IMG/VR virus record: IMGVR_UViG_3300012931_000759 | Span: 62,001 to 126,000 of that record | Length of the DNA: 64,000 nucleotides | Direction: 5' to 3' (one strand) | In this document: positions 176 through 54,608 of the stretch, piece by piece | Layout of the letters: each line of letters begins with the position of its first letter | How positions within the stretch are numbered: position 1 is the stretch's first letter | The notes under the pieces: generated by a model | Told to the model about the DNA's origin: nothing | The model's input: only the letters and a program-made list of their open reading frames with translations | Databases searched by the model: none | Position numbers and translations under genes: made by a program

Positions 176-246
176 CGCGCGATAGCTCAATTGGTAGAGC
201 AAGCCCTTGACCGGGCGGGATCCGGGTTTCGAGGCTCGGTCGCGCA
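176..246 (+). pseudogene. degenerate tRNA-like element upstream of the Ubl operon
   Basis: GCGCGA/TCGCGC acceptor-like stem, canonical D arm TAGCTCAATTGGTAGAGC, GCCC/GGGC stem with 6-nt loop TTGACC, T-arm-like CCGGG-TTTCGAGG-CTCGG; loop sizes non-canonical. Confidence 0.55.
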
Positions 247-260
247 CTAGGAGAAAGACA

Positions 261-1241
261 ATGGGTTGGCAGGACCTGCTCGCATCGGACGACGACAAGA
301 AGACGCTTCCGTGGACGGGCGGCAGGCAGATCCACGATAGGGAGCGCACCTGGACGATCGAGGGGAGGCTCCCGGACGAGCACGGCTGGTACTCGTTCCG
401 CGTGTCTGGCGGTCGCAAGGCCGAGCTGGAGGGTCCTATGGACCCCGATTCCGATTTCGAGAACGGCCACAAGCTCGCCAAGGGGTACCTGGTGGGAGAC
501 CGGCTGATCCAGGACGACGCGAGGGTCGATCCCGACCCGGTCAGGCTGGTCGACCAGACGACGCCCGTGTTTCTGGTGGAGCCGGGTCTAGATCGGTTCG
601 TGAGGGCGGTGGTAGCTAGGACAAGAGGCGGTCTAGTGTATATCAGACAGGAGTTCCCGCAGGGTTCCGAGGCGGCCGTTCAGATGGCCTACCAGGACCG
701 CAAGGACTCGGTGGTACACGTGGCCGGGGTCACCCCGGCGCTCGACTTGGCGTTCCGCTGGCTCTCCGGCCAGAGGCTGGCGGCCGAGGAGCGCGAACGC
801 GAGATGGCGCGTATCAGGGCCGAGGAGGAGCGCAAGTGGGCGGAAGCTGAGCGATTTAAGCAGGCGATGAAGGATTCTGGAACCGGAGCAGGCAGAAGGG
901 CGCTGGCACAGCGCGATTTCAACACAGCTGCCAAGGCGGCTTTGAAACTCACTGGAGCGGAATTACTGGATGCTAGACCGTCATACAACCGACGTGAAAT
1001 GGTAGTTCAGTATCGGTTTCAGAACAGGCGACTTGAGTGTGTGGTTGATAAAGACACACTACGCGTGGTTGACTCTGGTATCTGTTTGACCGACCACCAC
1101 ACTGGCGTGAAAGGTGATATGCGTTTTACGCTTGAATCGCTTCCCACCGTTGTTGGTCAGGCGATACGGGAAAACAAACTTGTGGTGTACCGGCATGTTG
1201 ACGGAGATCGGGATTATGCCGACGACAATTGGGACGATTGA
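261..1241 (+). CDS. putative E2-like/conjugation-associated protein (central coiled coil, C-terminal DSGICL Cys motif)
   Basis: AGGAG RBS before ATG 261; VVDSGICLTD resembles the E2 G-x-ICL catalytic Cys context; first gene of the JAB-Ubl-E1 cluster; function inferred. Confidence 0.45.
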   Translation: MGWQDLLASDDDKKTLPWTGGRQIHDRERTWTIEGRLPDEHGWYSFRVSGGRKAELEGPMDPDSDFENGHKLAKGYLVGDRLIQDDARVDPDPVRLVDQTTPVFLVEPGLDRFVRAVVARTRGGLVYIRQEFPQGSEAAVQMAYQDRKDSVVHVAGVTPALDLAFRWLSGQRLAAEEREREMARIRAEEERKWAEAERFKQAMKDSGTGAGRRALAQRDFNTAAKAALKLTGAELLDARPSYNRREMVVQYRFQNRRLECVVDKDTLRVVDSGICLTDHHTGVKGDMRFTLESLPTVVGQAIRENKLVVYRHVDGDRDYADDNWDD

Positions 1242-2050
1242 TGTCATTTGTGCGAAAAACTGCCGCCAGAAACAGGCGCACCAATCATATGGTGACGGCG
1301 TTTGGGCGGACTCAATGTATTGCCGCCTGGGTCGAAGAGAGCGGTTTGCCTTATCATACTGTCCGTGTTCGTTTGAAACTAGGCTGGAATACGGAAGATG
1401 CGGTATCATTGCCCGTTGGTGCCAACAGGTTTGGACGCACTGTAATTTTGCCTCTTACTTTTGCGGATCTGGTGTCGGATCCAACAGTATTGAAACAATT
1501 TAGGGCCAGAGAACGAGTACCGCTGTTATGTTCAACTTGTGGGATACCTTTCGATAAGTTGAGAGAAGCGCTGACACCCAGTGATCTGAAGAGAAGCGGC
1601 GTTTTCTGTTCCCGTAGTTGTGCAGGTAAGTTCGGTCGGCAGTCACAACTAGAAACAGTGGACTCGGTCGTTGGTCGACATTGTATTAATTGTGGCATTT
1701 GGAAACCTCTTATTAAATTTGGTGAGAGCCGAGTATGCTATACATGTCGCAACAGCATGCCGAAGGTTCGATATCACGAATATATAAGGCACGATAAACA
1801 TGGTTTTGGTTTAACATTTGATGAATTTATGAAATTCTGGCAACAGCCTTGTTGGTATTGTGGTTGTTCGATTACAACCATTGGCATCGATCGTATAGAT
1901 AATGCCCAAGGCCATGTGATGGGAAACTGTGTTTCCTGCTGTGCTCGATGTAACCGTATGAAAAGTAAATTCTCTCAGGAGGATTTTTTAGATCAATGTC
2001 GTCGCATTGTGGCGCAACATTCAAACACGGAGAATATACGTGATGCTTGA
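1241..2050 (+). CDS. HNH homing endonuclease with Zn-finger motifs
   Basis: CWYCG..IGIDRIDN..GH..GNCVSCCARCNRMK HNH signature; several CxxC; visibly lower GC than neighbours. Confidence 0.85.
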   Translation: MSFVRKTAARNRRTNHMVTAFGRTQCIAAWVEESGLPYHTVRVRLKLGWNTEDAVSLPVGANRFGRTVILPLTFADLVSDPTVLKQFRARERVPLLCSTCGIPFDKLREALTPSDLKRSGVFCSRSCAGKFGRQSQLETVDSVVGRHCINCGIWKPLIKFGESRVCYTCRNSMPKVRYHEYIRHDKHGFGLTFDEFMKFWQQPCWYCGCSITTIGIDRIDNAQGHVMGNCVSCCARCNRMKSKFSQEDFLDQCRRIVAQHSNTENIRDA

Positions 2051-2417
2051 AACGGCATTTGTTTTTACATGTGACGGATCGGTGTTGTATTGGCATTGTC
2101 CAATCGGACGCACTGGCGGTGCTTTGCCAGATTCCCGCAATCTTTGGGACATCCTTTGGGAGAACAGGGAACGGTTGGGTGGTATTGCTCACACACATCC
2201 TTGGTTTGGCGAACCTGTTCCCTCTGGAACAGATGTGACGACATTTGCCGCTGTTGAAGCGGGGCTGGGAAAACGGCTGGTGTGGCCAATCGTGACCATG
2301 AACCAGGTGAAAACATTTATGTGGGTGGGACCCGGCAAGCACGATTATCGGGCGGTTCCTTTCCTCAAAAGCGATGACATCTTTGACCTTCGAAGACTGT
2401 CGGAAAAAGGAGAATGA
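2043..2417 (+). CDS. JAB/MPN+ (Mov34) metalloisopeptidase
   Basis: N-terminal Glu (MLE) and JAMM motif AHTHP..PSGTD (HxH-x7-S-x2-D). Confidence 0.85.
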   Translation: MLETAFVFTCDGSVLYWHCPIGRTGGALPDSRNLWDILWENRERLGGIAHTHPWFGEPVPSGTDVTTFAAVEAGLGKRLVWPIVTMNQVKTFMWVGPGKHDYRAVPFLKSDDIFDLRRLSEKGE

Positions 2418-2683
2418 CAATGGACGAGATCCAGGCTGGAATGGCGAGACTGAACATCACATGGCAAGGTAGCAATGGCGATCTACAAGACCCTGTGGCC
2501 TACGACTCTACCGATGTCGCTATCAAGCAGATGGCTGTCGAGGCGGTTCGCACTGGGTATGTTGCTGGTATTCAGGCTGATCCGAATGTCGATTTCACGG
2601 ACTTTGTGGTGGATCGGTTTGCGGCTACTGCCGAATTGCCCAACCGATTGTTTTTGAGAAGTAAGACGCCATTCGGGGCGTAG
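2414..2683 (+). CDS. small ubiquitin-like protein, C-terminus KTPFG-A
   Basis: 89 aa between JAB and ThiF; last strand (LFLR) followed by a tail with a penultimate Gly; RBS AAGGAG; fold inferred. Confidence 0.65.
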   Translation: MTMDEIQAGMARLNITWQGSNGDLQDPVAYDSTDVAIKQMAVEAVRTGYVAGIQADPNVDFTDFVVDRFAATAELPNRLFLRSKTPFGA

Positions 2684-2694
2684 GACGAAGCGGA

Positions 2695-2722
2695 ACCCGA
2701 GGGGCAAATAAGTCCCTCGGGT
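2695..2722 (+). promoter_or_regulatory. 10-bp intergenic hairpin without U-tract
   Basis: ACCCGAGGGG-caaataag-TCCCTCGGGT between Ubl and E1. Confidence 0.6.
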
Positions 2723-2739
2723 CGCTGAAAGGCTGAACG

Positions 2740-3321
2740 ATGGAAAAGACAGTCGTGATCGTTGGCGTTGGCGCGCTCGGCTCCCATGTGGTGCTTCTGG
2801 CGCGCAACTGGAAAAACCCCTTGCGTATTGCGGATTTCGACAGAATCGAGACCAAAAATATCCAGTCTCAGTTCCATAGCAAGATGGGACTCGGCAAAAA
2901 CAAAGCGCAGGCGCTCCAGCAAGCCCTACAAGGGCTGTTTGGAGTCAAGGTTGAGGCGATCTCGCACAAGTTGGCGGACGATAACGCCGAGAATTTACTC
3001 AAGTCGGCAACTCTTGTGATCGACTGTACGGATAACATTGCCGCTAGGCGCGTTATTCAGAAGTATGTCAGGAAGCACGACATCCCATGTCTCCACGGGG
3101 CGCTTTCGGCCGATGGGGCTTTCGGGCGCGTCGTCTGGGACGAGCACTTCACCGCCGACGAGGAGGGCAAGGAGGGGCAGGCGACCTGCGAGGACGGCGA
3201 GCAGCTCCCGATGTTTGCGCTCGCGGCGGCCCAGGTGGCGGTCGTCGCCCAGCGGTTCCTGAAGGATGGCACCAGGCAGAGTTTCCAAGTGATGCCTGTG
3301 GGCATAGTGAGGCTGGCATGA
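2740..3321 (+). CDS. ThiF/MoeB/E1-family adenylyltransferase
   Basis: VIVGVGALGS, DFDRIETKN, GKNKA, DCTDN..AR motifs; candidate catalytic Cys in ATCED; no CxxC Zn site. Confidence 0.92.
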   Translation: MEKTVVIVGVGALGSHVVLLARNWKNPLRIADFDRIETKNIQSQFHSKMGLGKNKAQALQQALQGLFGVKVEAISHKLADDNAENLLKSATLVIDCTDNIAARRVIQKYVRKHDIPCLHGALSADGAFGRVVWDEHFTADEEGKEGQATCEDGEQLPMFALAAAQVAVVAQRFLKDGTRQSFQVMPVGIVRLA

Positions 3322-3640: not shown

Positions 3641-3714
3641 GCTCCCATCGTCCAGGGGCAGGACGCCGGTCTTTCAAGCCGGAAACGCGGGTTCAATTCC
3701 CGCTGGGAGCACCA
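3641..3714 (+). tRNA. tRNA-Glu(TTC)
   Basis: complete cloverleaf, loop CT-TTC-AA, encoded CCA. Confidence 0.95.
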
Positions 3715-4315
3715 ACAAACCATGGTCGAGTTCCCAATGGTGGTTGCGGCAGAGTCCGATTAGGTTGTCGGGACTGTTTACTGTAACTACGAGGGTGCTC
3801 ATCGGGAAACTCGTGATCGGTTTGATGTGGCAGCATTCTACATGTGTGGAGTAACCGCAGGTAGCGCATCGTTTGAGTTTCCCAAGACTCTTGGCCACAT
3901 TGCGGGCATGTTCCCCCACAATGGATTTGTAGGAGTTGCGCGAACCGCTTGCTGTTGCGACATCCGCCAAGGTGGCATGACCGATCTTTATGAATCGGTC
4001 TTTGCGGCAGTTGTCACAGAATTTCCTTCTCAACGGAATCGATGTTCCGCAGACGGTACAGGCGTTGGTCCGTTCTTTCTTGGGTTTCTCTGCGTTGATG
4101 TACGAGGATGAACAGGATCGACTACAGAATCTGTCGTTTTTCGTGTCTCGTCCACAATTTAGGCACTTGATGGTTGGTTTGTCGCGTGCTGCTCGGAAAC
4201 ACGCCACCGAACAAAAGAGACGCTTGATGCCGCGTTTCATGTTTTTTGCGTACCAGCATTGGGGTCGCGTGAATTCATGGTGGCAATGGTCGCAGATCAA
4301 GGTAACATCGCTCAC
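3674..4315 (-). CDS. HNH endonuclease with Zn fingers
   Basis: AAGGAG RBS with GTG start; CATCG..ECCHIKPI..NLIGLCRNHH. Confidence 0.85.
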   Translation of the reverse strand: MSDVTLICDHCHHEFTRPQCWYAKNMKRGIKRLFCSVACFRAARDKPTIKCLNCGRDTKNDRFCSRSCSSSYINAEKPKKERTNACTVCGTSIPLRRKFCDNCRKDRFIKIGHATLADVATASGSRNSYKSIVGEHARNVAKSLGKLKRCATCGYSTHVECCHIKPITSFPMSTLVVTVNSPDNLIGLCRNHHWELDHGLLVLPAGIEPAFPA

Positions 4316-4467: not shown

Positions 4468-4659
4468 ATGTTCGGAGAACCGGAGGATGTCGAGGGCGAA
4501 TGCAACGCCCGCCTGTACATAGCCGACAATTTCGGGGACAACCACGCCACGATGCGGTGCCAGCTTTCCAAGGGCCATGATGGATCGCACCAGGAGGTGT
4601 TCCATCGCGACGGCGGCGAGGTGCGCGTGACCTGGGAAGGCGACGAACGCGAAGACTAG
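4468..4659 (+). CDS. hypothetical protein
   Basis: GGAGG RBS, 63 aa, fills the gap between tRNAs. Confidence 0.6.
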   Translation: MFGEPEDVEGECNARLYIADNFGDNHATMRCQLSKGHDGSHQEVFHRDGGEVRVTWEGDERED

Positions 4660-4748
4660 CCCCCGTAGCTCAATGGTGGAGCGACAGCCTTATAAGCTGG
4701 GAGCGTCTGATAAACGCAAGGTTGCAGGTTCGACTCCTGCCGGGGGCA
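4659..4748 (+). tRNA. tRNA with TAT (Ile) anticodon and long variable arm
   Basis: GCCCCCG/CGGGGGC acceptor, CT-TAT-AA loop, V-arm GCGT-CTGATAA-ACGC, T arm GCAGG-TTCGACT-CCTGC. Confidence 0.88.
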
Positions 4749-4764
4749 CGAGAGGCGGAAAAAA

Positions 4765-11998: not shown

Positions 11999-12016
11999 AA
12001 ACAATGGTTTTATAAT

Positions 12017-12106
12017 GGAAGGCCCGTCAGGCATTGGTGCCCTGTGCGCGCCCGCTAAGCGCGTGGGGATTAACCTCCCCTAGCAGTTCGATTCTGCTGC
12101 CTTCCG
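12017..12106 (+). tRNA. tRNA-Ser(GCT), non-canonical C8/C33
   Basis: GGAAGGC/GCCTTCC with G73, CC-GCT-AA loop, V-arm GGGGA/TCCCC, T arm. Confidence 0.8.
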
Positions 12107-12221
12107 ATGGATTTTGGTGGGTACATTTTGTGTTGGTTTTAGGTGTGCGGCTCGAATTTGCGTGGGTCTGAAATATGGTTCCGTCTATTCAACTTATACA
12201 CCCACCACCAAGGAGAAAAAC

Positions 12222-47142: not shown

Positions 47143-51243
<4,101 letters not shown>

Positions 51244-53059: not shown

Positions 53060-53388
53060 CAAAGATATCCAAGGAAATCGGAAGCGGTCTGAACGACAGC
53101 AGACCGAAGCTGGAAACGCTTCTCCTCGATGCCGAGATTGGAACGATCGTCGTCGAGCACAAGGACAGGCTAGCCCGCTTCGGCTTCAACTACATCCAGA
53201 AGATGCTCGAACGAAACGGAAGATCGATCGAAGTCGTGAACGAGGCGGAGAACGAGGAAGTCGACCTCATGTCCGATTTCGTCGCCATCATAACGAGTTT
53301 CACTGTAAGGCTCTACGGTCAGCGGAGAAGTCGGCGGAAGACCGAGAAGATCATCGAGGAACTGAAGCGGGAAGACAAGGACAACTGA
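53060..53388 (+). pseudogene. tnpA: IS607 TnpA serine recombinase, 5'-truncated
   Basis: EIGSGLND.R.KL, VEHKDRLARFGF, LYGQRRS; MerR HTH and catalytic YARVS absent. Confidence 0.85.
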
Positions 53389-54608
53389 TGTTCCGCTCCA
53401 CAAGGACGACGCTGAAATTCGCGAATGTGGGAAAGCGGGAAGCCATCAAAGGCTTCATCGCAGAGTACCGCTCCGTCGTCTCGAAGTTCATCAAGATCCT
53501 CTGGGGACAGGACAAGATTCCTTCGCTTCTCCCAAAGGACACCACATCGCAAATCAAAACTTGGCTCTCGGCGAGAGCCGTCCAATGCGCAGGCAAGCAG
53601 GCTTCGGGAATCGTCAGGGGAACGAGACGCAAGCAGGAGAAGCGTCTTTTCATCCTAGACAGATTGAAAACGCAAGGAAACCGCAAGCAGGCAAGGAGAC
53701 TTCAAGCCATAATCGACAGGTTGGAAGCCTCCAAGCCAAACATCTCCCGCATCGAACCAGAACTCGACGAGAGGTTCGTCAAGCAGGACTGGGACAATCT
53801 GACATTCTTCGACGGAGTCGTGACTTTATCTTCGCTAGGCAACAGGTTGAATATCTCGATTCCCGTGAAGAGGACGAAGCATTTCAACAGGATGTTGGAA
53901 CGGGGAACGCTTGGCAAAGGAATCAGACTGTCTGAAGATTCGATCTCCTTTAACTTCAAAATCGAAGGAAACCCCAAGAAAGAAACCGGGGAGACCATTG
54001 GTCTCGACATTGGCGTCACGAATGTCTTCACGATGTCGAACGGAGTCACTTCGCAGAAGAACAAACATGGTCACGACCTCGCTTCGATCAACTTCATCCT
54101 GTCCAGGAAGACAAAAGGCTCCAAGGCGTTCAAAAGAACGCAGGAGCACAGGAAGAACTACATCAACTGGTCGCTGAACCAAGTGAACCTCGACGGGATC
54201 AAGACCCTTCGGGTCGAGGGCATCAAGCATCTTCGGTTTGGCAAGAGATCGTCGAGATACTTGAGCCACTTCACATACACCGAGATCTTCGGGAAAATAG
54301 GGTCGTTGGCTTTCGACAACGGTGTCCGCTTGGAAAAAGTCAATCCGACCTACACATCCCAAAGGTGTAGCAGGTGTGGCTGGGTGCGCAGCACGAATCG
54401 GAAGGGAAAGCAGTTCAGGTGTGTCAAGTGCGGTTTCGCATTGGATGCCGACTTGAATGCTTCCCTAAACATTTGTGCCGATCTTCGTCCCATTGGAACG
54501 AAAGAACGGCTGTTTCACAAGAACAGGAAAGGTTTCTGTTGGAGCGAAGCAGGGAAGGAACCTATAGTTCCTTCTGCCCAAAAACCTGATGGCAATAAAC
54601 TGCCATAA
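53388..54608 (+). CDS. tnpB: TnpB RNA-guided endonuclease
   Basis: RuvC GLDIG / VEG / DADLNA and TSQRCSRCG..CVKCG Zn finger. Confidence 0.92.
   Translation: MFRSTRTTLKFANVGKREAIKGFIAEYRSVVSKFIKILWGQDKIPSLLPKDTTSQIKTWLSARAVQCAGKQASGIVRGTRRKQEKRLFILDRLKTQGNRKQARRLQAIIDRLEASKPNISRIEPELDERFVKQDWDNLTFFDGVVTLSSLGNRLNISIPVKRTKHFNRMLERGTLGKGIRLSEDSISFNFKIEGNPKKETGETIGLDIGVTNVFTMSNGVTSQKNKHGHDLASINFILSRKTKGSKAFKRTQEHRKNYINWSLNQVNLDGIKTLRVEGIKHLRFGKRSSRYLSHFTYTEIFGKIGSLAFDNGVRLEKVNPTYTSQRCSRCGWVRSTNRKGKQFRCVKCGFALDADLNASLNICADLRPIGTKERLFHKNRKGFCWSEAGKEPIVPSAQKPDGNKLP

What the first reader, a model, noticed from the sequence alone, without database searches (positions are those of the whole stretch)
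261..3321. Phage-encoded ubiquitin-like conjugation operon: E2-like, JAB, Ubl and E1
Seen: a co-oriented, mostly overlap-coupled run of a 326-aa protein with a DSGICL motif, a JAB peptidase with an intact JAMM motif, an 89-aa protein ending KTPFG-A, and a minimal ThiF/E1 with a candidate catalytic Cys (ATCED) and no Zn site. Known: E1-E2-Ubl-JAB sets in bacteria (Bil, CBASS Cap2/Cap3) conjugate proteins, often in antiphage defence. Inference: here the full activate/transfer/remove cycle is carried by a large phage, with no adjacent thiamine, molybdopterin or cysteine-synthesis genes. It may tag host or virion proteins, or decoy a host Ubl defence. This is the best candidate for an undescribed system in the window.
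Basis: partly seen in the sequence, partly recalled or inferred. Interest (0 to 1): 0.9.

Follow-up and report, generated by a model that had tools for sequence, protein, structure and literature searches.

The report
Jumbo-phage ubiquitin-like tagging operon
A huge bacteriophage carries a conserved gene set (activating enzyme, small ubiquitin-like protein, trimming protease, a new cysteine protein and, just upstream, an adhesion-domain protein) that looks like a self-contained, so far undescribed protein-tagging system, found in over a hundred related phage and bacterial loci.

Summary
They are a 326-aa protein with an invariant Cys (261-1241), a JAB/JAMM peptidase (true start 2043, to 2417), an 89-aa ubiquitin-like protein ending KTPFG-A (2414-2683), and a 193-aa minimal ThiF-type E1 (2740-3321).

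An HNH homing-endonuclease gene (1241-2050) is inserted between the first two genes. A fifth conserved gene, a ~630-aa protein with a complete VWA/MIDAS domain, lies just upstream of the window.

- **Synteny:** the order VWA, Cys protein, JAB, Ubl, E1 recurs in 78 viral loci (contigs up to 618 kb) and 38 genome or MAG loci. These include chromosomes of two actinomycete isolates.
- **Ubl end:** it always reaches an invariant Gly, followed by unrelated tails of 0-61 aa.
- **JAB role:** all 12 loci without JAB encode a tail-less Ubl (Fisher p = 8e-8). JAB therefore looks like the precursor-trimming peptidase.
- **E2 claim:** homology of the 326-aa protein to E2 enzymes was tested four ways and not found. 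Only its invariant Cys supports a carrier role.

Best reading: a Ubl activation and conjugation module of a new architecture. It is carried by the phage but is not exclusive to phages, and I found no description of it. Its target and biological role are unknown.

The parts
176..247 (+). Degenerate tRNA-like element between the upstream VWA gene and p326. It is probably not part of the mechanism.
   Evidence: Rfam tRNA 28.8 bits against a gathering score of 29, with a shortened anticodon loop. ARAGORN does not call it.
261..1241 (+). p326, a two-domain protein of a new family. It has an N-terminal beta-rich domain, a long helix, and a C-terminal alpha/beta domain carrying invariant Cys275 in the motif D-[AS]-G-[IV]-C-L. 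It is the candidate Ubl carrier or ligase (E2-like in role only).
   Evidence: 1407 homologues, none with a Pfam domain. AF2 model pLDDT 93. G273, C275, L276, D286, L291 and P295 are invariant in 104-105 sequences, including the bacterial copies. No match to known folds or families.
1241..2050 (+). HNH/endonuclease VII-type homing endonuclease gene inserted into the operon. It is not part of the system.
   Evidence: PHROG endonuclease VII E 6.7e-20 and HNH families. It is absent at this position in L003, L005-L007 and most loci. GC is 39-48% against 65% in the flanks.
2043..2417 (+). JAB/JAMM metallopeptidase (124 aa), predicted to trim the Ubl precursor at its C-terminus and possibly to act as a deconjugase.
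   Evidence: Prok-JAB matches in 6 of 7 orthologues. E, HxH, S and D are invariant. The 12 loci lacking JAB all encode a tail-less Ubl.
2414..2683 (+). Ubiquitin-like protein precursor (89 aa). Invariant Gly88 (codon 2675-2677) is followed by one removable Ala.
   Evidence: AF2 pLDDT 87.7 with beta-beta-alpha-beta-beta order. The best Foldseek matches are predominantly beta-grasp domains, but E is 0.16 or worse. The K-T-P-F-G end is conserved, then tails of 0-61 aa.
2689..2726 (+). GC-rich hairpin between Ubl and E1 with no T-run. It may set the Ubl:E1 expression ratio.
   Evidence: -28.5 kcal/mol, z = -4.5 against shuffles. It is not called as a terminator. It is not conserved: L003 has a 9-nt gap at this position.
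2740..3321 (+). Minimal E1 (ThiF/MoeB-type adenylyltransferase, 193 aa) with a conserved Cys150 in the region after the Rossmann core. It has no Zn site and no rhodanese domain.
   Evidence: Pfam ThiF 5.6e-27. MoeB 5e-9 and ThiF 3e-8 in PDB. GxGxxG, R22, D95/D98, R103 and C150 are conserved in 97-98 sequences, and no sequence has paired CxxC motifs.

Best explanation
This is a self-contained ubiquitin-like protein activation and conjugation module with five conserved genes: VWA/MIDAS protein, p326, JAB, Ubl and E1.

Proposed cycle:
1. The Ubl is made as a precursor with a variable C-terminal tail (here one Ala). The JAB metallopeptidase removes the tail and exposes the invariant Gly.
2. The minimal ThiF-type E1 adenylates that Gly, and probably takes it as a thioester on Cys150.
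3. The Ubl passes to the invariant Cys275 of p326, which acts as carrier or ligase (the E2 role, without shown E2 ancestry).
4. The Ubl is then attached to a protein amine.
5. The VWA protein, whose metal-ion adhesion site is complete, recruits the target, binds the Ubl, or is itself the target.
6. JAB may also reverse the tag.

Supported by comparative evidence: gene content, conservation, catalytic residues, the processed C-terminus, and the JAB-tail link. Inferred: adenylation, both thioesters, protein conjugation, and the role of the VWA protein. The biological purpose in the phage is unknown.
For: - Strict five-gene synteny: VWA 76/78, p326 78/78, JAB 78/78, Ubl 75/78 and E1 74/78 in viral loci. 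The same order holds in 38 genome or MAG loci, including isolates.
- In compact loci the genes abut or overlap.
- E1 is a bona fide ThiF domain with all nucleotide-site residues and a conserved Cys.
- The Ubl model has beta-grasp strand order, and its Foldseek matches are mostly beta-grasp domains.
- Its end K-T-P-F-G is conserved, followed by unrelated tails of 0-61 aa.
- JAB catalytic residues are invariant.
- JAB-less loci have a tail-less Ubl in 12/12 cases, against 17/84 in JAB-containing loci (Fisher p = 8e-8).
- p326 Cys275 and its motif survive to 25-30% identity, whereas Cys260 and His279 do not.
- A p326-like gene directly precedes a minimal ThiF on a Dolichospermum plasmid.
- The MIDAS residues DxSxS..T..D are invariant in 64 VWA proteins.
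- No sulfur-transfer or cofactor genes are among the conserved neighbours.
Against: - p326 shows no detectable homology to E2/UBC or any other known fold. Its role rests on one invariant Cys and on synteny.
- The E1 is closest in sequence to the sulfur-carrier activators ThiF and MoeB.
- The Ubl fold match is not statistically significant (E 0.16 or worse).
- No target is identified and no biochemical data exist.
- Archaeal SAMP and Thermus TtuB conjugate without any E2 (established knowledge), so a carrier is not strictly required.
- Loss of JAB in 12 loci shows that deconjugation is not essential.
Confidence: 0.55

Rival explanations
1. Sulfur-carrier pathway. The Ubl is trimmed by JAB, adenylated by E1 and converted to a C-terminal thiocarboxylate. 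That thiocarboxylate donates sulfur to a small molecule or to tRNA (as with ThiS, MoaD, CysO/Mec+, QbsE/QbsD or TtuB). p326 Cys275 would act as a persulfide relay or sulfur-insertion enzyme.
For: The E1 is closest to ThiF and MoeB. JAB trimming of sulfur carriers is known (QbsD, Mec+; established knowledge). In about 34 of 48 phage loci the module lies inside the tRNA gene array.
Against: The conserved set has no rhodanese domain, cysteine desulfurase, PP-loop ATPase or radical-SAM partner. The E1 lacks both the Zn site and a rhodanese domain. The Ubl ends in a single F-G, not G-G. The conserved VWA/MIDAS protein is left unexplained. The chromosomal copies are mostly not next to tRNA arrays.
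Confidence: 0.15
2. E2-independent tagging. The E1 alone conjugates the Ubl, as in the archaeal SAMP/UbaA and Thermus TtuB/TtuC systems. p326 and the VWA protein would then be the substrates, or a regulated complex, rather than enzymes of the cascade.
For: E2 homology of p326 could not be shown. E1-only conjugation has precedent (established knowledge). p326 and VWA are always encoded together and are often translationally coupled.
Against: A single Cys in a conserved loop is invariant in 105/105 p326 sequences over very deep divergence, while neighbouring residues drift. This is typical of a catalytic residue and not of a substrate. The p326-like/ThiF pair persists on a cyanobacterial plasmid where my models found no JAB and no Ubl; a VWA-like fragment matches only at the locus edge.
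Confidence: 0.15
3. Counter-defence. The phage set mainly strips or decoys host Ubl-based immunity (Bil, or CBASS Cap2/Cap3), with JAB as the active deubiquitinase.
For: Host Ubl defence systems exist and conjugate Ubl to phage tail proteins (10.1101/2023.09.04.556158, seen). The module is carried by many jumbo phages.
Against: JAB is the one component that is lost in 12 loci. The same operon occurs in bacterial chromosomes without any phage context. A decoy would not need an E1, a Cys protein and a VWA protein conserved together. The window's proteins give only generic ThiF-domain and weak JAB matches in PADLOC, and p326 and the Ubl give none.
Confidence: 0.08

Closest known systems
Bil system (BilABCD; operon type 6d of Iyer et al. 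2006, PMC1779556; PMC10557695)
   Same: It has separate genes for a Ubl, a Cys-containing transfer protein, a JAB peptidase and an E1. Its E2 also lacks the classical His.
   Different: p326 has no detectable similarity to the Bil E2 or to any Prok-E2 Pfam family. The phage module has an extra N-terminal domain on p326, a conserved VWA/MIDAS gene, a much smaller E1, and a single-domain Ubl ending in F-G. It is encoded by phages rather than serving as an anti-phage island.
CBASS type II Cap2/Cap3
   Same: It has E1 chemistry and a JAB peptidase. The window's E1 matches the E1 part of the PADLOC E1-E2 models (best E 1.7e-16).
   Different: Cap2 is an E1-E2 fusion that conjugates the CD-NTase itself. 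Here there is no CD-NTase, no fusion and a free Ubl.
Sulfur-carrier pairs with JAB trimming (CysO/MoeZ/Mec+, QbsE/QbsC/QbsD, TtuB/TtuC)
   Same: The E1s are the nearest in sequence (ThiF, MoeB). A small beta-grasp protein has a C-terminal Gly that JAB exposes.
   Different: The phage module has no rhodanese domain or desulfurase and no biosynthetic enzyme. The Ubl ends F-G rather than G-G. An invariant-Cys protein and a VWA protein are present instead.
vWA-MoxR 'FtsH ternary' conflict systems with a Ubl tri-ligase set (Kaur et al. 2020, PMC7159879)
   Same: A vWA protein is genomically coupled to JAB, E1 and Ubl. The hosts are bacteria with complex lifestyles (actinomycetes, Myxococcota).
   Different: Those systems need MoxR and FtsH ATPases, a RING E3, an E2-Ubl fusion and effector domains. 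None of these is among the five conserved genes here.
Lambda and T1 [12 protein letters not shown] TAPI/TAPK (Iyer et al. 2006)
   Same: A phage-encoded Ubl-like domain with a C-terminal Gly is paired with a JAB peptidase.
   Different: TAPI/TAPK has no E1 and no Cys protein, lies in the tail gene cluster, and has its JAB fused to NlpC/P60.

Membership tests
E1 / ThiF-MoeB adenylyltransferase superfamily | ThiF Rossmann domain above the curated threshold, with GxGxxG, an Arg finger and a DxxD/N Mg site | tested here: met
   Pfam ThiF 94.9 bits against a cut-off of 28.1. G9, G11, G14, R22, D95, D98 and R103 are conserved in 97-98 sequences.
E1 / ThiF-MoeB adenylyltransferase superfamily | Zn-binding paired CxxC motifs of true ThiF/MoeB, or a rhodanese domain as in MoeZ/Uba4 | tested here: not met
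   0 of 98 E1s have two CxxC motifs. The protein is 193 aa with no further domain. All NCBIfam equivalogs score far below their cut-offs.
JAMM/MPN+ (JAB) metallopeptidases | E ... HxH ... S..D catalytic constellation and a Prok-JAB profile match | tested here: met
   E3, H50, H52, S61 and D64 are invariant in 85-92 sequences. Prok-JAB matches 6 of 7 orthologues, and the Spirillospora copy passes at 28.6 bits against 25. The window copy itself is sub-threshold (21.3 bits), and the spacer is x8 rather than x7.
Ubiquitin-like beta-grasp modifiers | Beta-grasp fold | tested here: inconclusive
   The AF2 model has pLDDT 87.7 with beta-beta-alpha-beta-beta order. The best Foldseek PDB matches are predominantly beta-grasp domains (PI3K RBD, PB1, ubiquilin, NLE1 UBL, SUMO), but E is 0.16 or worse and TM is about 0.5. 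There is no sequence-profile hit.
Ubiquitin-like beta-grasp modifiers | C-terminal Gly that is terminal or exposed by processing, encoded next to an E1 | tested here: met
   The Gly is conserved 99/99 and tails are 0-61 aa. The Ubl gene lies upstream of the E1 gene in every locus where both were found, often directly adjacent.
Ubiquitin-like beta-grasp modifiers | Adenylation and covalent transfer by the E1 | not testable with these tools
   This needs biochemistry.
E2 / UBC superfamily | Sequence-profile match to UQ_con or any Prok-E2 family | tested here: not met
   0 of 117 family members hit any E2 family at E up to 1. There is no PADLOC or NCBIfam hit. A profile of the C-terminal domain against PDB sequences gives only chance-level, non-E2 matches.
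E2 / UBC superfamily | UBC fold (helix, four-strand meander, Cys loop, helices) | tested here: inconclusive
   The C-terminal domain of the model reads helix, four strands, Cys275 loop, helix. No E2 is among the Foldseek matches shown (the best 50) in PDB or BFVD.
E2 / UBC superfamily | HPN motif and the active-site signature G-x-[LIV]-C-[LIV] (PROSITE UBC pattern, recalled from memory) | tested here: not met
   There is no H-P-N. The motif is D-[AS]-G-[IV]-C-L, with the Gly one position closer to the Cys, and His279 is not conserved (61/117).
E2 / UBC superfamily | Invariant catalytic Cys | tested here: met
   Cys275 is conserved 105/105, including the chromosomal copies at 25-30% identity.
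Sulfur-carrier biosynthetic systems (ThiS/ThiF, MoaD/MoeB, CysO, QbsE, TtuB) | Linked sulfurtransferase and sulfur-using biosynthetic enzyme, and a G-G terminus | tested here: not met
   The conserved neighbours are only VWA, p326, JAB, Ubl and E1. The terminus is F-G.
VWA domain with MIDAS (the upstream gene) | DxSxS, T and D metal-site residues and a VWA profile match | tested here: met
   VWA_2 scores 28 bits against 27 in the phage copy, and higher in L001 and L115. D461, S463, S465, T524 and D551 are invariant in 64 sequences. PDB VWA domains match at 1e-5.
vWA-MoxR/FtsH ternary Ubl systems | MoxR AAA+, FtsH, RING E3 and an E2-Ubl fusion in the operon | tested here: not met
   None of these is among the genes conserved across loci. 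The flanks of the chromosomal copies hold unrelated genes.

The most novel reading that the evidence does not exclude
This would be the first complete ubiquitin-like conjugation machinery encoded by viruses of bacteria. It is built around a previously unknown class of Cys-dependent Ubl carrier or ligase (p326) and a MIDAS-domain receptor. A large clade of jumbo phages, probably of Myxococcota, would use it to tag host or phage proteins during infection. It shares ancestry with an uncharacterised chromosomal operon of actinomycetes and myxobacteria.
Probability: 0.4. Interest if true: 0.85.

Novelty: new variant of a known kind. Interest (0 to 1): 0.72.

Why it matters
Ubl conjugation in bacteria has so far been described as host immunity (CBASS, Bil, Bub) or as sulfur metabolism. 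Here the full activate, trim and transfer set is carried by the virus and conserved in more than a hundred loci and over 1,400 homologues. That implies a strong, unexplored function in jumbo-phage infection.

Two of its proteins (p326 and the N-terminal 420 aa of the VWA protein) match no known family. p326 may therefore represent an independent solution to the E2 step.

The JAB-less, tail-less natural variants give a clean evolutionary readout of what JAB does. Chromosomal copies in culturable strains (Virgisporangium ochraceum NBRC 16418, Spirillospora sp. NPDC047279) make the system experimentally reachable even though no cultured phage carries it.

Tried and rejected
1. **p326 as a recognisable E2.** I tried Pfam on 117 members, PADLOC, NCBIfam, a PDB profile of the C-terminal domain, and Foldseek against PDB and BFVD. 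None gave an E2 or any significant match.
2. **p326 as a Cys-His peptidase.** Rejected, because His279 is present in only 61 of 117 sequences and no other His is conserved.
3. **PRTRC system membership.** The E1 hits PRTRC_ThiF only at 1e-9, far below its cut-off, and the other PRTRC proteins are absent.
4. **The VWA protein as Ro60/Rsr (TROVE+VWA) paired with the tRNA-like element as a Y RNA.** There is no TROVE Pfam hit and no Ro60 chain in the PDB profile search. The RNA element scores only as a borderline tRNA.
5. **TtuA-type tRNA thiolation.** No PP-loop protein is in the conserved set.
6. **hhalign against real E2 families.** Not done, because no E2 sequences could be obtained through the tools without typing them.
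7. **Scans of genome contigs with the broad alignments A2 and A5.** The narrower A7 worked.
8. **JAB against PDB.** Neither the single sequence nor the profile gave a hit.


Full report
**1. What is in the window**

ORF listing and the raw sequence show a co-oriented + strand run:
- p326 at 261-1241, with an RBS-like AGGAGA upstream.
- An ORF at 1229/1241-2050.
- JAB at 2007/2043-2417.
- An 89-aa ORF at 2414-2683.
- A 193-aa ORF at 2740-3321.

The junctions are TGATG, ATGCTTGA and ATGA overlaps. A 56-nt gap before the last gene holds a strong hairpin (-28.5 kcal/mol, z = -4.5).

Family scans gave the following.
- The last protein is a ThiF domain (Pfam 5.6e-27), nearest to ThiF and MoeB in NCBIfam and PDB.
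- The JAB has a sub-threshold Prok-JAB match.
- The extra ORF is an HNH/endonuclease VII-type homing endonuclease (PHROG 6.7e-20).
- p326 and the 89-aa protein match nothing in Pfam, NCBIfam, PHROGs or PADLOC.

The window is bases 62001-126000 of the 340-kb IMG/VR contig UViG_3300012931_000759. It also carries seven tRNA genes, DNA methyltransferases, a topoisomerase II, HNH genes and a transposase.

**2. The set is conserved and has five members**

tblastn against GenBank phages found p326 only in the metagenomic Caudoviricetes record Rctr197k. There p326, JAB, Ubl and E1 homologues lie in the same order but spread over 7.5 kb.

Scans of IMG/VR gave 77 loci on contigs up to 618 kb. I searched all ORFs of the 78 loci with profile HMMs of each protein. 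This showed one invariant order, VWA protein, p326, JAB, Ubl, E1, always co-oriented:
- VWA 76/78
- p326 78/78
- JAB 78/78
- Ubl 75/78
- E1 74/78

Some misses lie at contig ends. In L077 the diverged Ubl escaped the HMM and was found by eye, ending AAFG.

Inserts of 0-7 kb separate the genes in some phages. In L003, L023, L033, L036 and others the genes abut. The HNH gene of the window is one such insert and is absent from the closest relative, L003.

The fifth gene encodes a protein of about 630 aa. It ends about 520 nt before window position 1 (L002 7236-9221). Its features are:
- A C-terminal VWA domain (Pfam VWA_2; PDB VWA domains at 1e-5).
- All five MIDAS residues invariant in 64 sequences.
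- An N-terminal 420 aa that match nothing.
- A family of 1613 proteins, one of which carries an intein.

**3. It is not phage-exclusive**

A scan of one genome per prokaryotic species found 38 further loci. Most are MAG contigs, and about 24 of 38 come from bins labelled Myxococcota, 'Deltaproteobacteria' or MYXO. This hints at the host, or it is a binning artefact.

Six loci are very diverged (25-41% identity). They include isolates Spirillospora sp. NPDC047279 and Virgisporangium ochraceum NBRC 16418, and a 1.19-Mb Polyangiaceae MAG contig. All have the same compact five-gene operon. Its flanks hold ordinary chromosomal genes: Ser/Thr kinases, LysR, MFS, RNase E, radical SAM and NosZ.

A p326-like gene followed by a 212-aa ThiF also sits on Dolichospermum plasmid pAfl69.

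**4. The individual proteins**

- **E1.** GxGxxG, R22, D95/D98, R103 and Cys150 (T-C-x-x-G) are conserved in 97-98 sequences. No sequence has the paired CxxC Zn site of ThiF/MoeB, and there is no rhodanese domain.
- **JAB.** E3, H50, H52, S61 and D64 are invariant. Six of seven orthologues match Prok-JAB, and the Spirillospora copy passes the Pfam threshold.
- **Ubl fold.** The AF2 model has pLDDT 87.7 with beta-beta-alpha-beta-beta order. The best Foldseek matches are predominantly beta-grasp domains (PI3K Ras-binding domain, PB1, ubiquilin, NLE1 UBL, SUMO, EccD1), but none is significant (E 0.16 or worse).
- **Ubl C-terminus.** The protein always runs to ...P-K-T-P-F-G. It then continues with unrelated tails of 0-61 aa, some with CxxC pairs, some acidic. 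This is the hallmark of a modifier matured by C-terminal trimming.
- **p326.** The AF2 model has pLDDT 93. It shows an N-terminal beta-rich domain (12-130), a 50-residue helix, and a C-terminal domain of helix, four strands, a loop with Cys275, and a helix. G273, C275, L276, D286, L291 and P295 are invariant in 104-105 sequences, and the motif survives in the chromosomal copies. C260 and H279 do not survive.

**5. A natural experiment on JAB**

Twelve loci lack JAB, with p326, Ubl and E1 directly adjacent. In all twelve the Ubl gene stops immediately after the Gly. Among JAB-containing loci, 67 have a tail and 17 do not (Fisher p = 8e-8). The simplest reading is that JAB's indispensable job is to remove the tail. 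Any deconjugase activity is optional.

**6. Is p326 an E2?**

I could not show it.
- None of 117 members hits UQ_con or a Prok-E2 family even at E = 1.
- PADLOC and NCBIfam are silent.
- A profile of the C-terminal domain finds only chance-level, non-E2 chains in PDB.
- Foldseek of the full model finds nothing significant in PDB or BFVD, and no E2 among the matches shown.

The order of secondary-structure elements and the motif [AS]-G-[IV]-C-L recall the E2 active site G-x-[IV]-C-L. That comparison is from memory, the Gly is offset by one, and HPN is absent. I therefore file p326 as E2-like in predicted role, not as a member of the E2 family.

**7. Mechanism and rivals**

The best-supported model runs in four steps:
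1. JAB trims the pro-Ubl.
2. The E1 adenylates Gly88 and probably forms a thioester on C150.
3. The Ubl is transferred to p326 C275.
4. The Ubl is conjugated to a protein.

The MIDAS protein would act as receptor, adaptor or target. Eukaryotic MDN1 MIDAS binds UBL domains, and that complex (8ql1) is among the Ubl's fold matches; this is a lead, not a test.

Rivals are a sulfur-carrier pathway, E1-only conjugation with p326 and VWA as substrates, and a counter-defence decoy. These are set out with their evidence in the rival explanations. The sulfur reading lacks every sulfur-handling partner. The decoy reading is hard to square with loss of JAB and with the chromosomal copies.

**8. Known or new**

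Text searches found the Bil, CBASS, Bub, lambda TAPI/TAPK and vWA-MoxR/FtsH Ubl systems, but no description of this gene set or of p326. The search library lacks most subscription journals, so an earlier mention in comparative-genomics papers cannot be excluded.

I rate it a new variant of a known kind: Ubl, E1 and JAB chemistry in a new five-gene architecture, with two unclassified proteins and a viral carrier.

Noticed in passing
window 176-247: A tRNA-like element lies directly upstream of p326. It scores 28.8 bits for Rfam tRNA against a gathering score of 29, has an anticodon loop one base short, and is not called by ARAGORN. It may be a decayed tRNA of the phage array.
   Followed up: partly
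window 1000-3000: A ~2-kb tract of about 50% GC (39-48% in the HNH gene) is embedded in sequence of 60-68% GC. It spans the 3' end of p326, HNH, JAB, Ubl and the 5' half of E1. This may be a co-conversion or recombination tract linked to the homing endonuclease.
   Followed up: partly
window 3674-4315 (- strand): A second HNH endonuclease gene (Pfam HNH_2, E 9.8e-8) on the opposite strand lies between tRNA-Glu and tRNA-Val. Its 3' end overlaps the tRNA-Glu call at 3641-3714.
   Followed up: no
window 4659-4749 and 12016-12107: The tRNA-Ile(tat) call is 91 nt long, which is unusual for a class I tRNA. It may hold an intron or an insertion, or ARAGORN may have over-extended it. The tRNA-Ser(gct) call is 92 nt.
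   Followed up: no
window 47146-51243 and 53388-54608: A 1365-aa topoisomerase II large-subunit gene matches its PHROG profile in separated stretches (1-433 and 1224-1357), which suggests an intein or a fusion. A transposase-family ORF lies nearby.
   Followed up: no
L003-L076: In about 34 of 48 related phage loci the five-gene module lies inside the phage tRNA array. tRNAs sit on the same strand on both sides, with up to 45 in +/-10 kb. tmRNA genes occur in L005, L006, L036 and L063. This could be conserved synteny or a link to translation.
   Followed up: partly
L114 7737-12232: On a 1.19-Mb Polyangiaceae MAG contig the five genes are bracketed by tRNA-Arg and tRNA-Trp genes 4.4 kb apart. 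It looks like a transferred cassette.
   Followed up: no
L117 2659-4352 (Dolichospermum plasmid pAfl69): A p326-like protein (motif SSGICLSG) is followed by a 212-aa ThiF, and my models found no JAB or Ubl. A VWA-like fragment lies at the locus edge and an IS1634 element lies downstream. This is either a reduced or a decayed variant.
   Followed up: partly
P0310: One homologue of the upstream VWA protein is 1043 aa and carries an intein with a homing endonuclease. This suggests the host protein matters to the phage.
   Followed up: no
L079-L116: About 24 of 38 genome-collection hits come from bins labelled Myxococcota, 'Deltaproteobacteria' or MYXO. This points to Myxococcota as possible hosts of this jumbo-phage clade, or to systematic mis-binning.
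   Followed up: no
window 1217-1238; L077 10249-10270: p326 ends in an acidic tail containing a Trp (DDNWDD here, GWDDDDD in L077). The tail is present in only a minority of homologues. It is a possible ligand for the MIDAS site.
   Followed up: no
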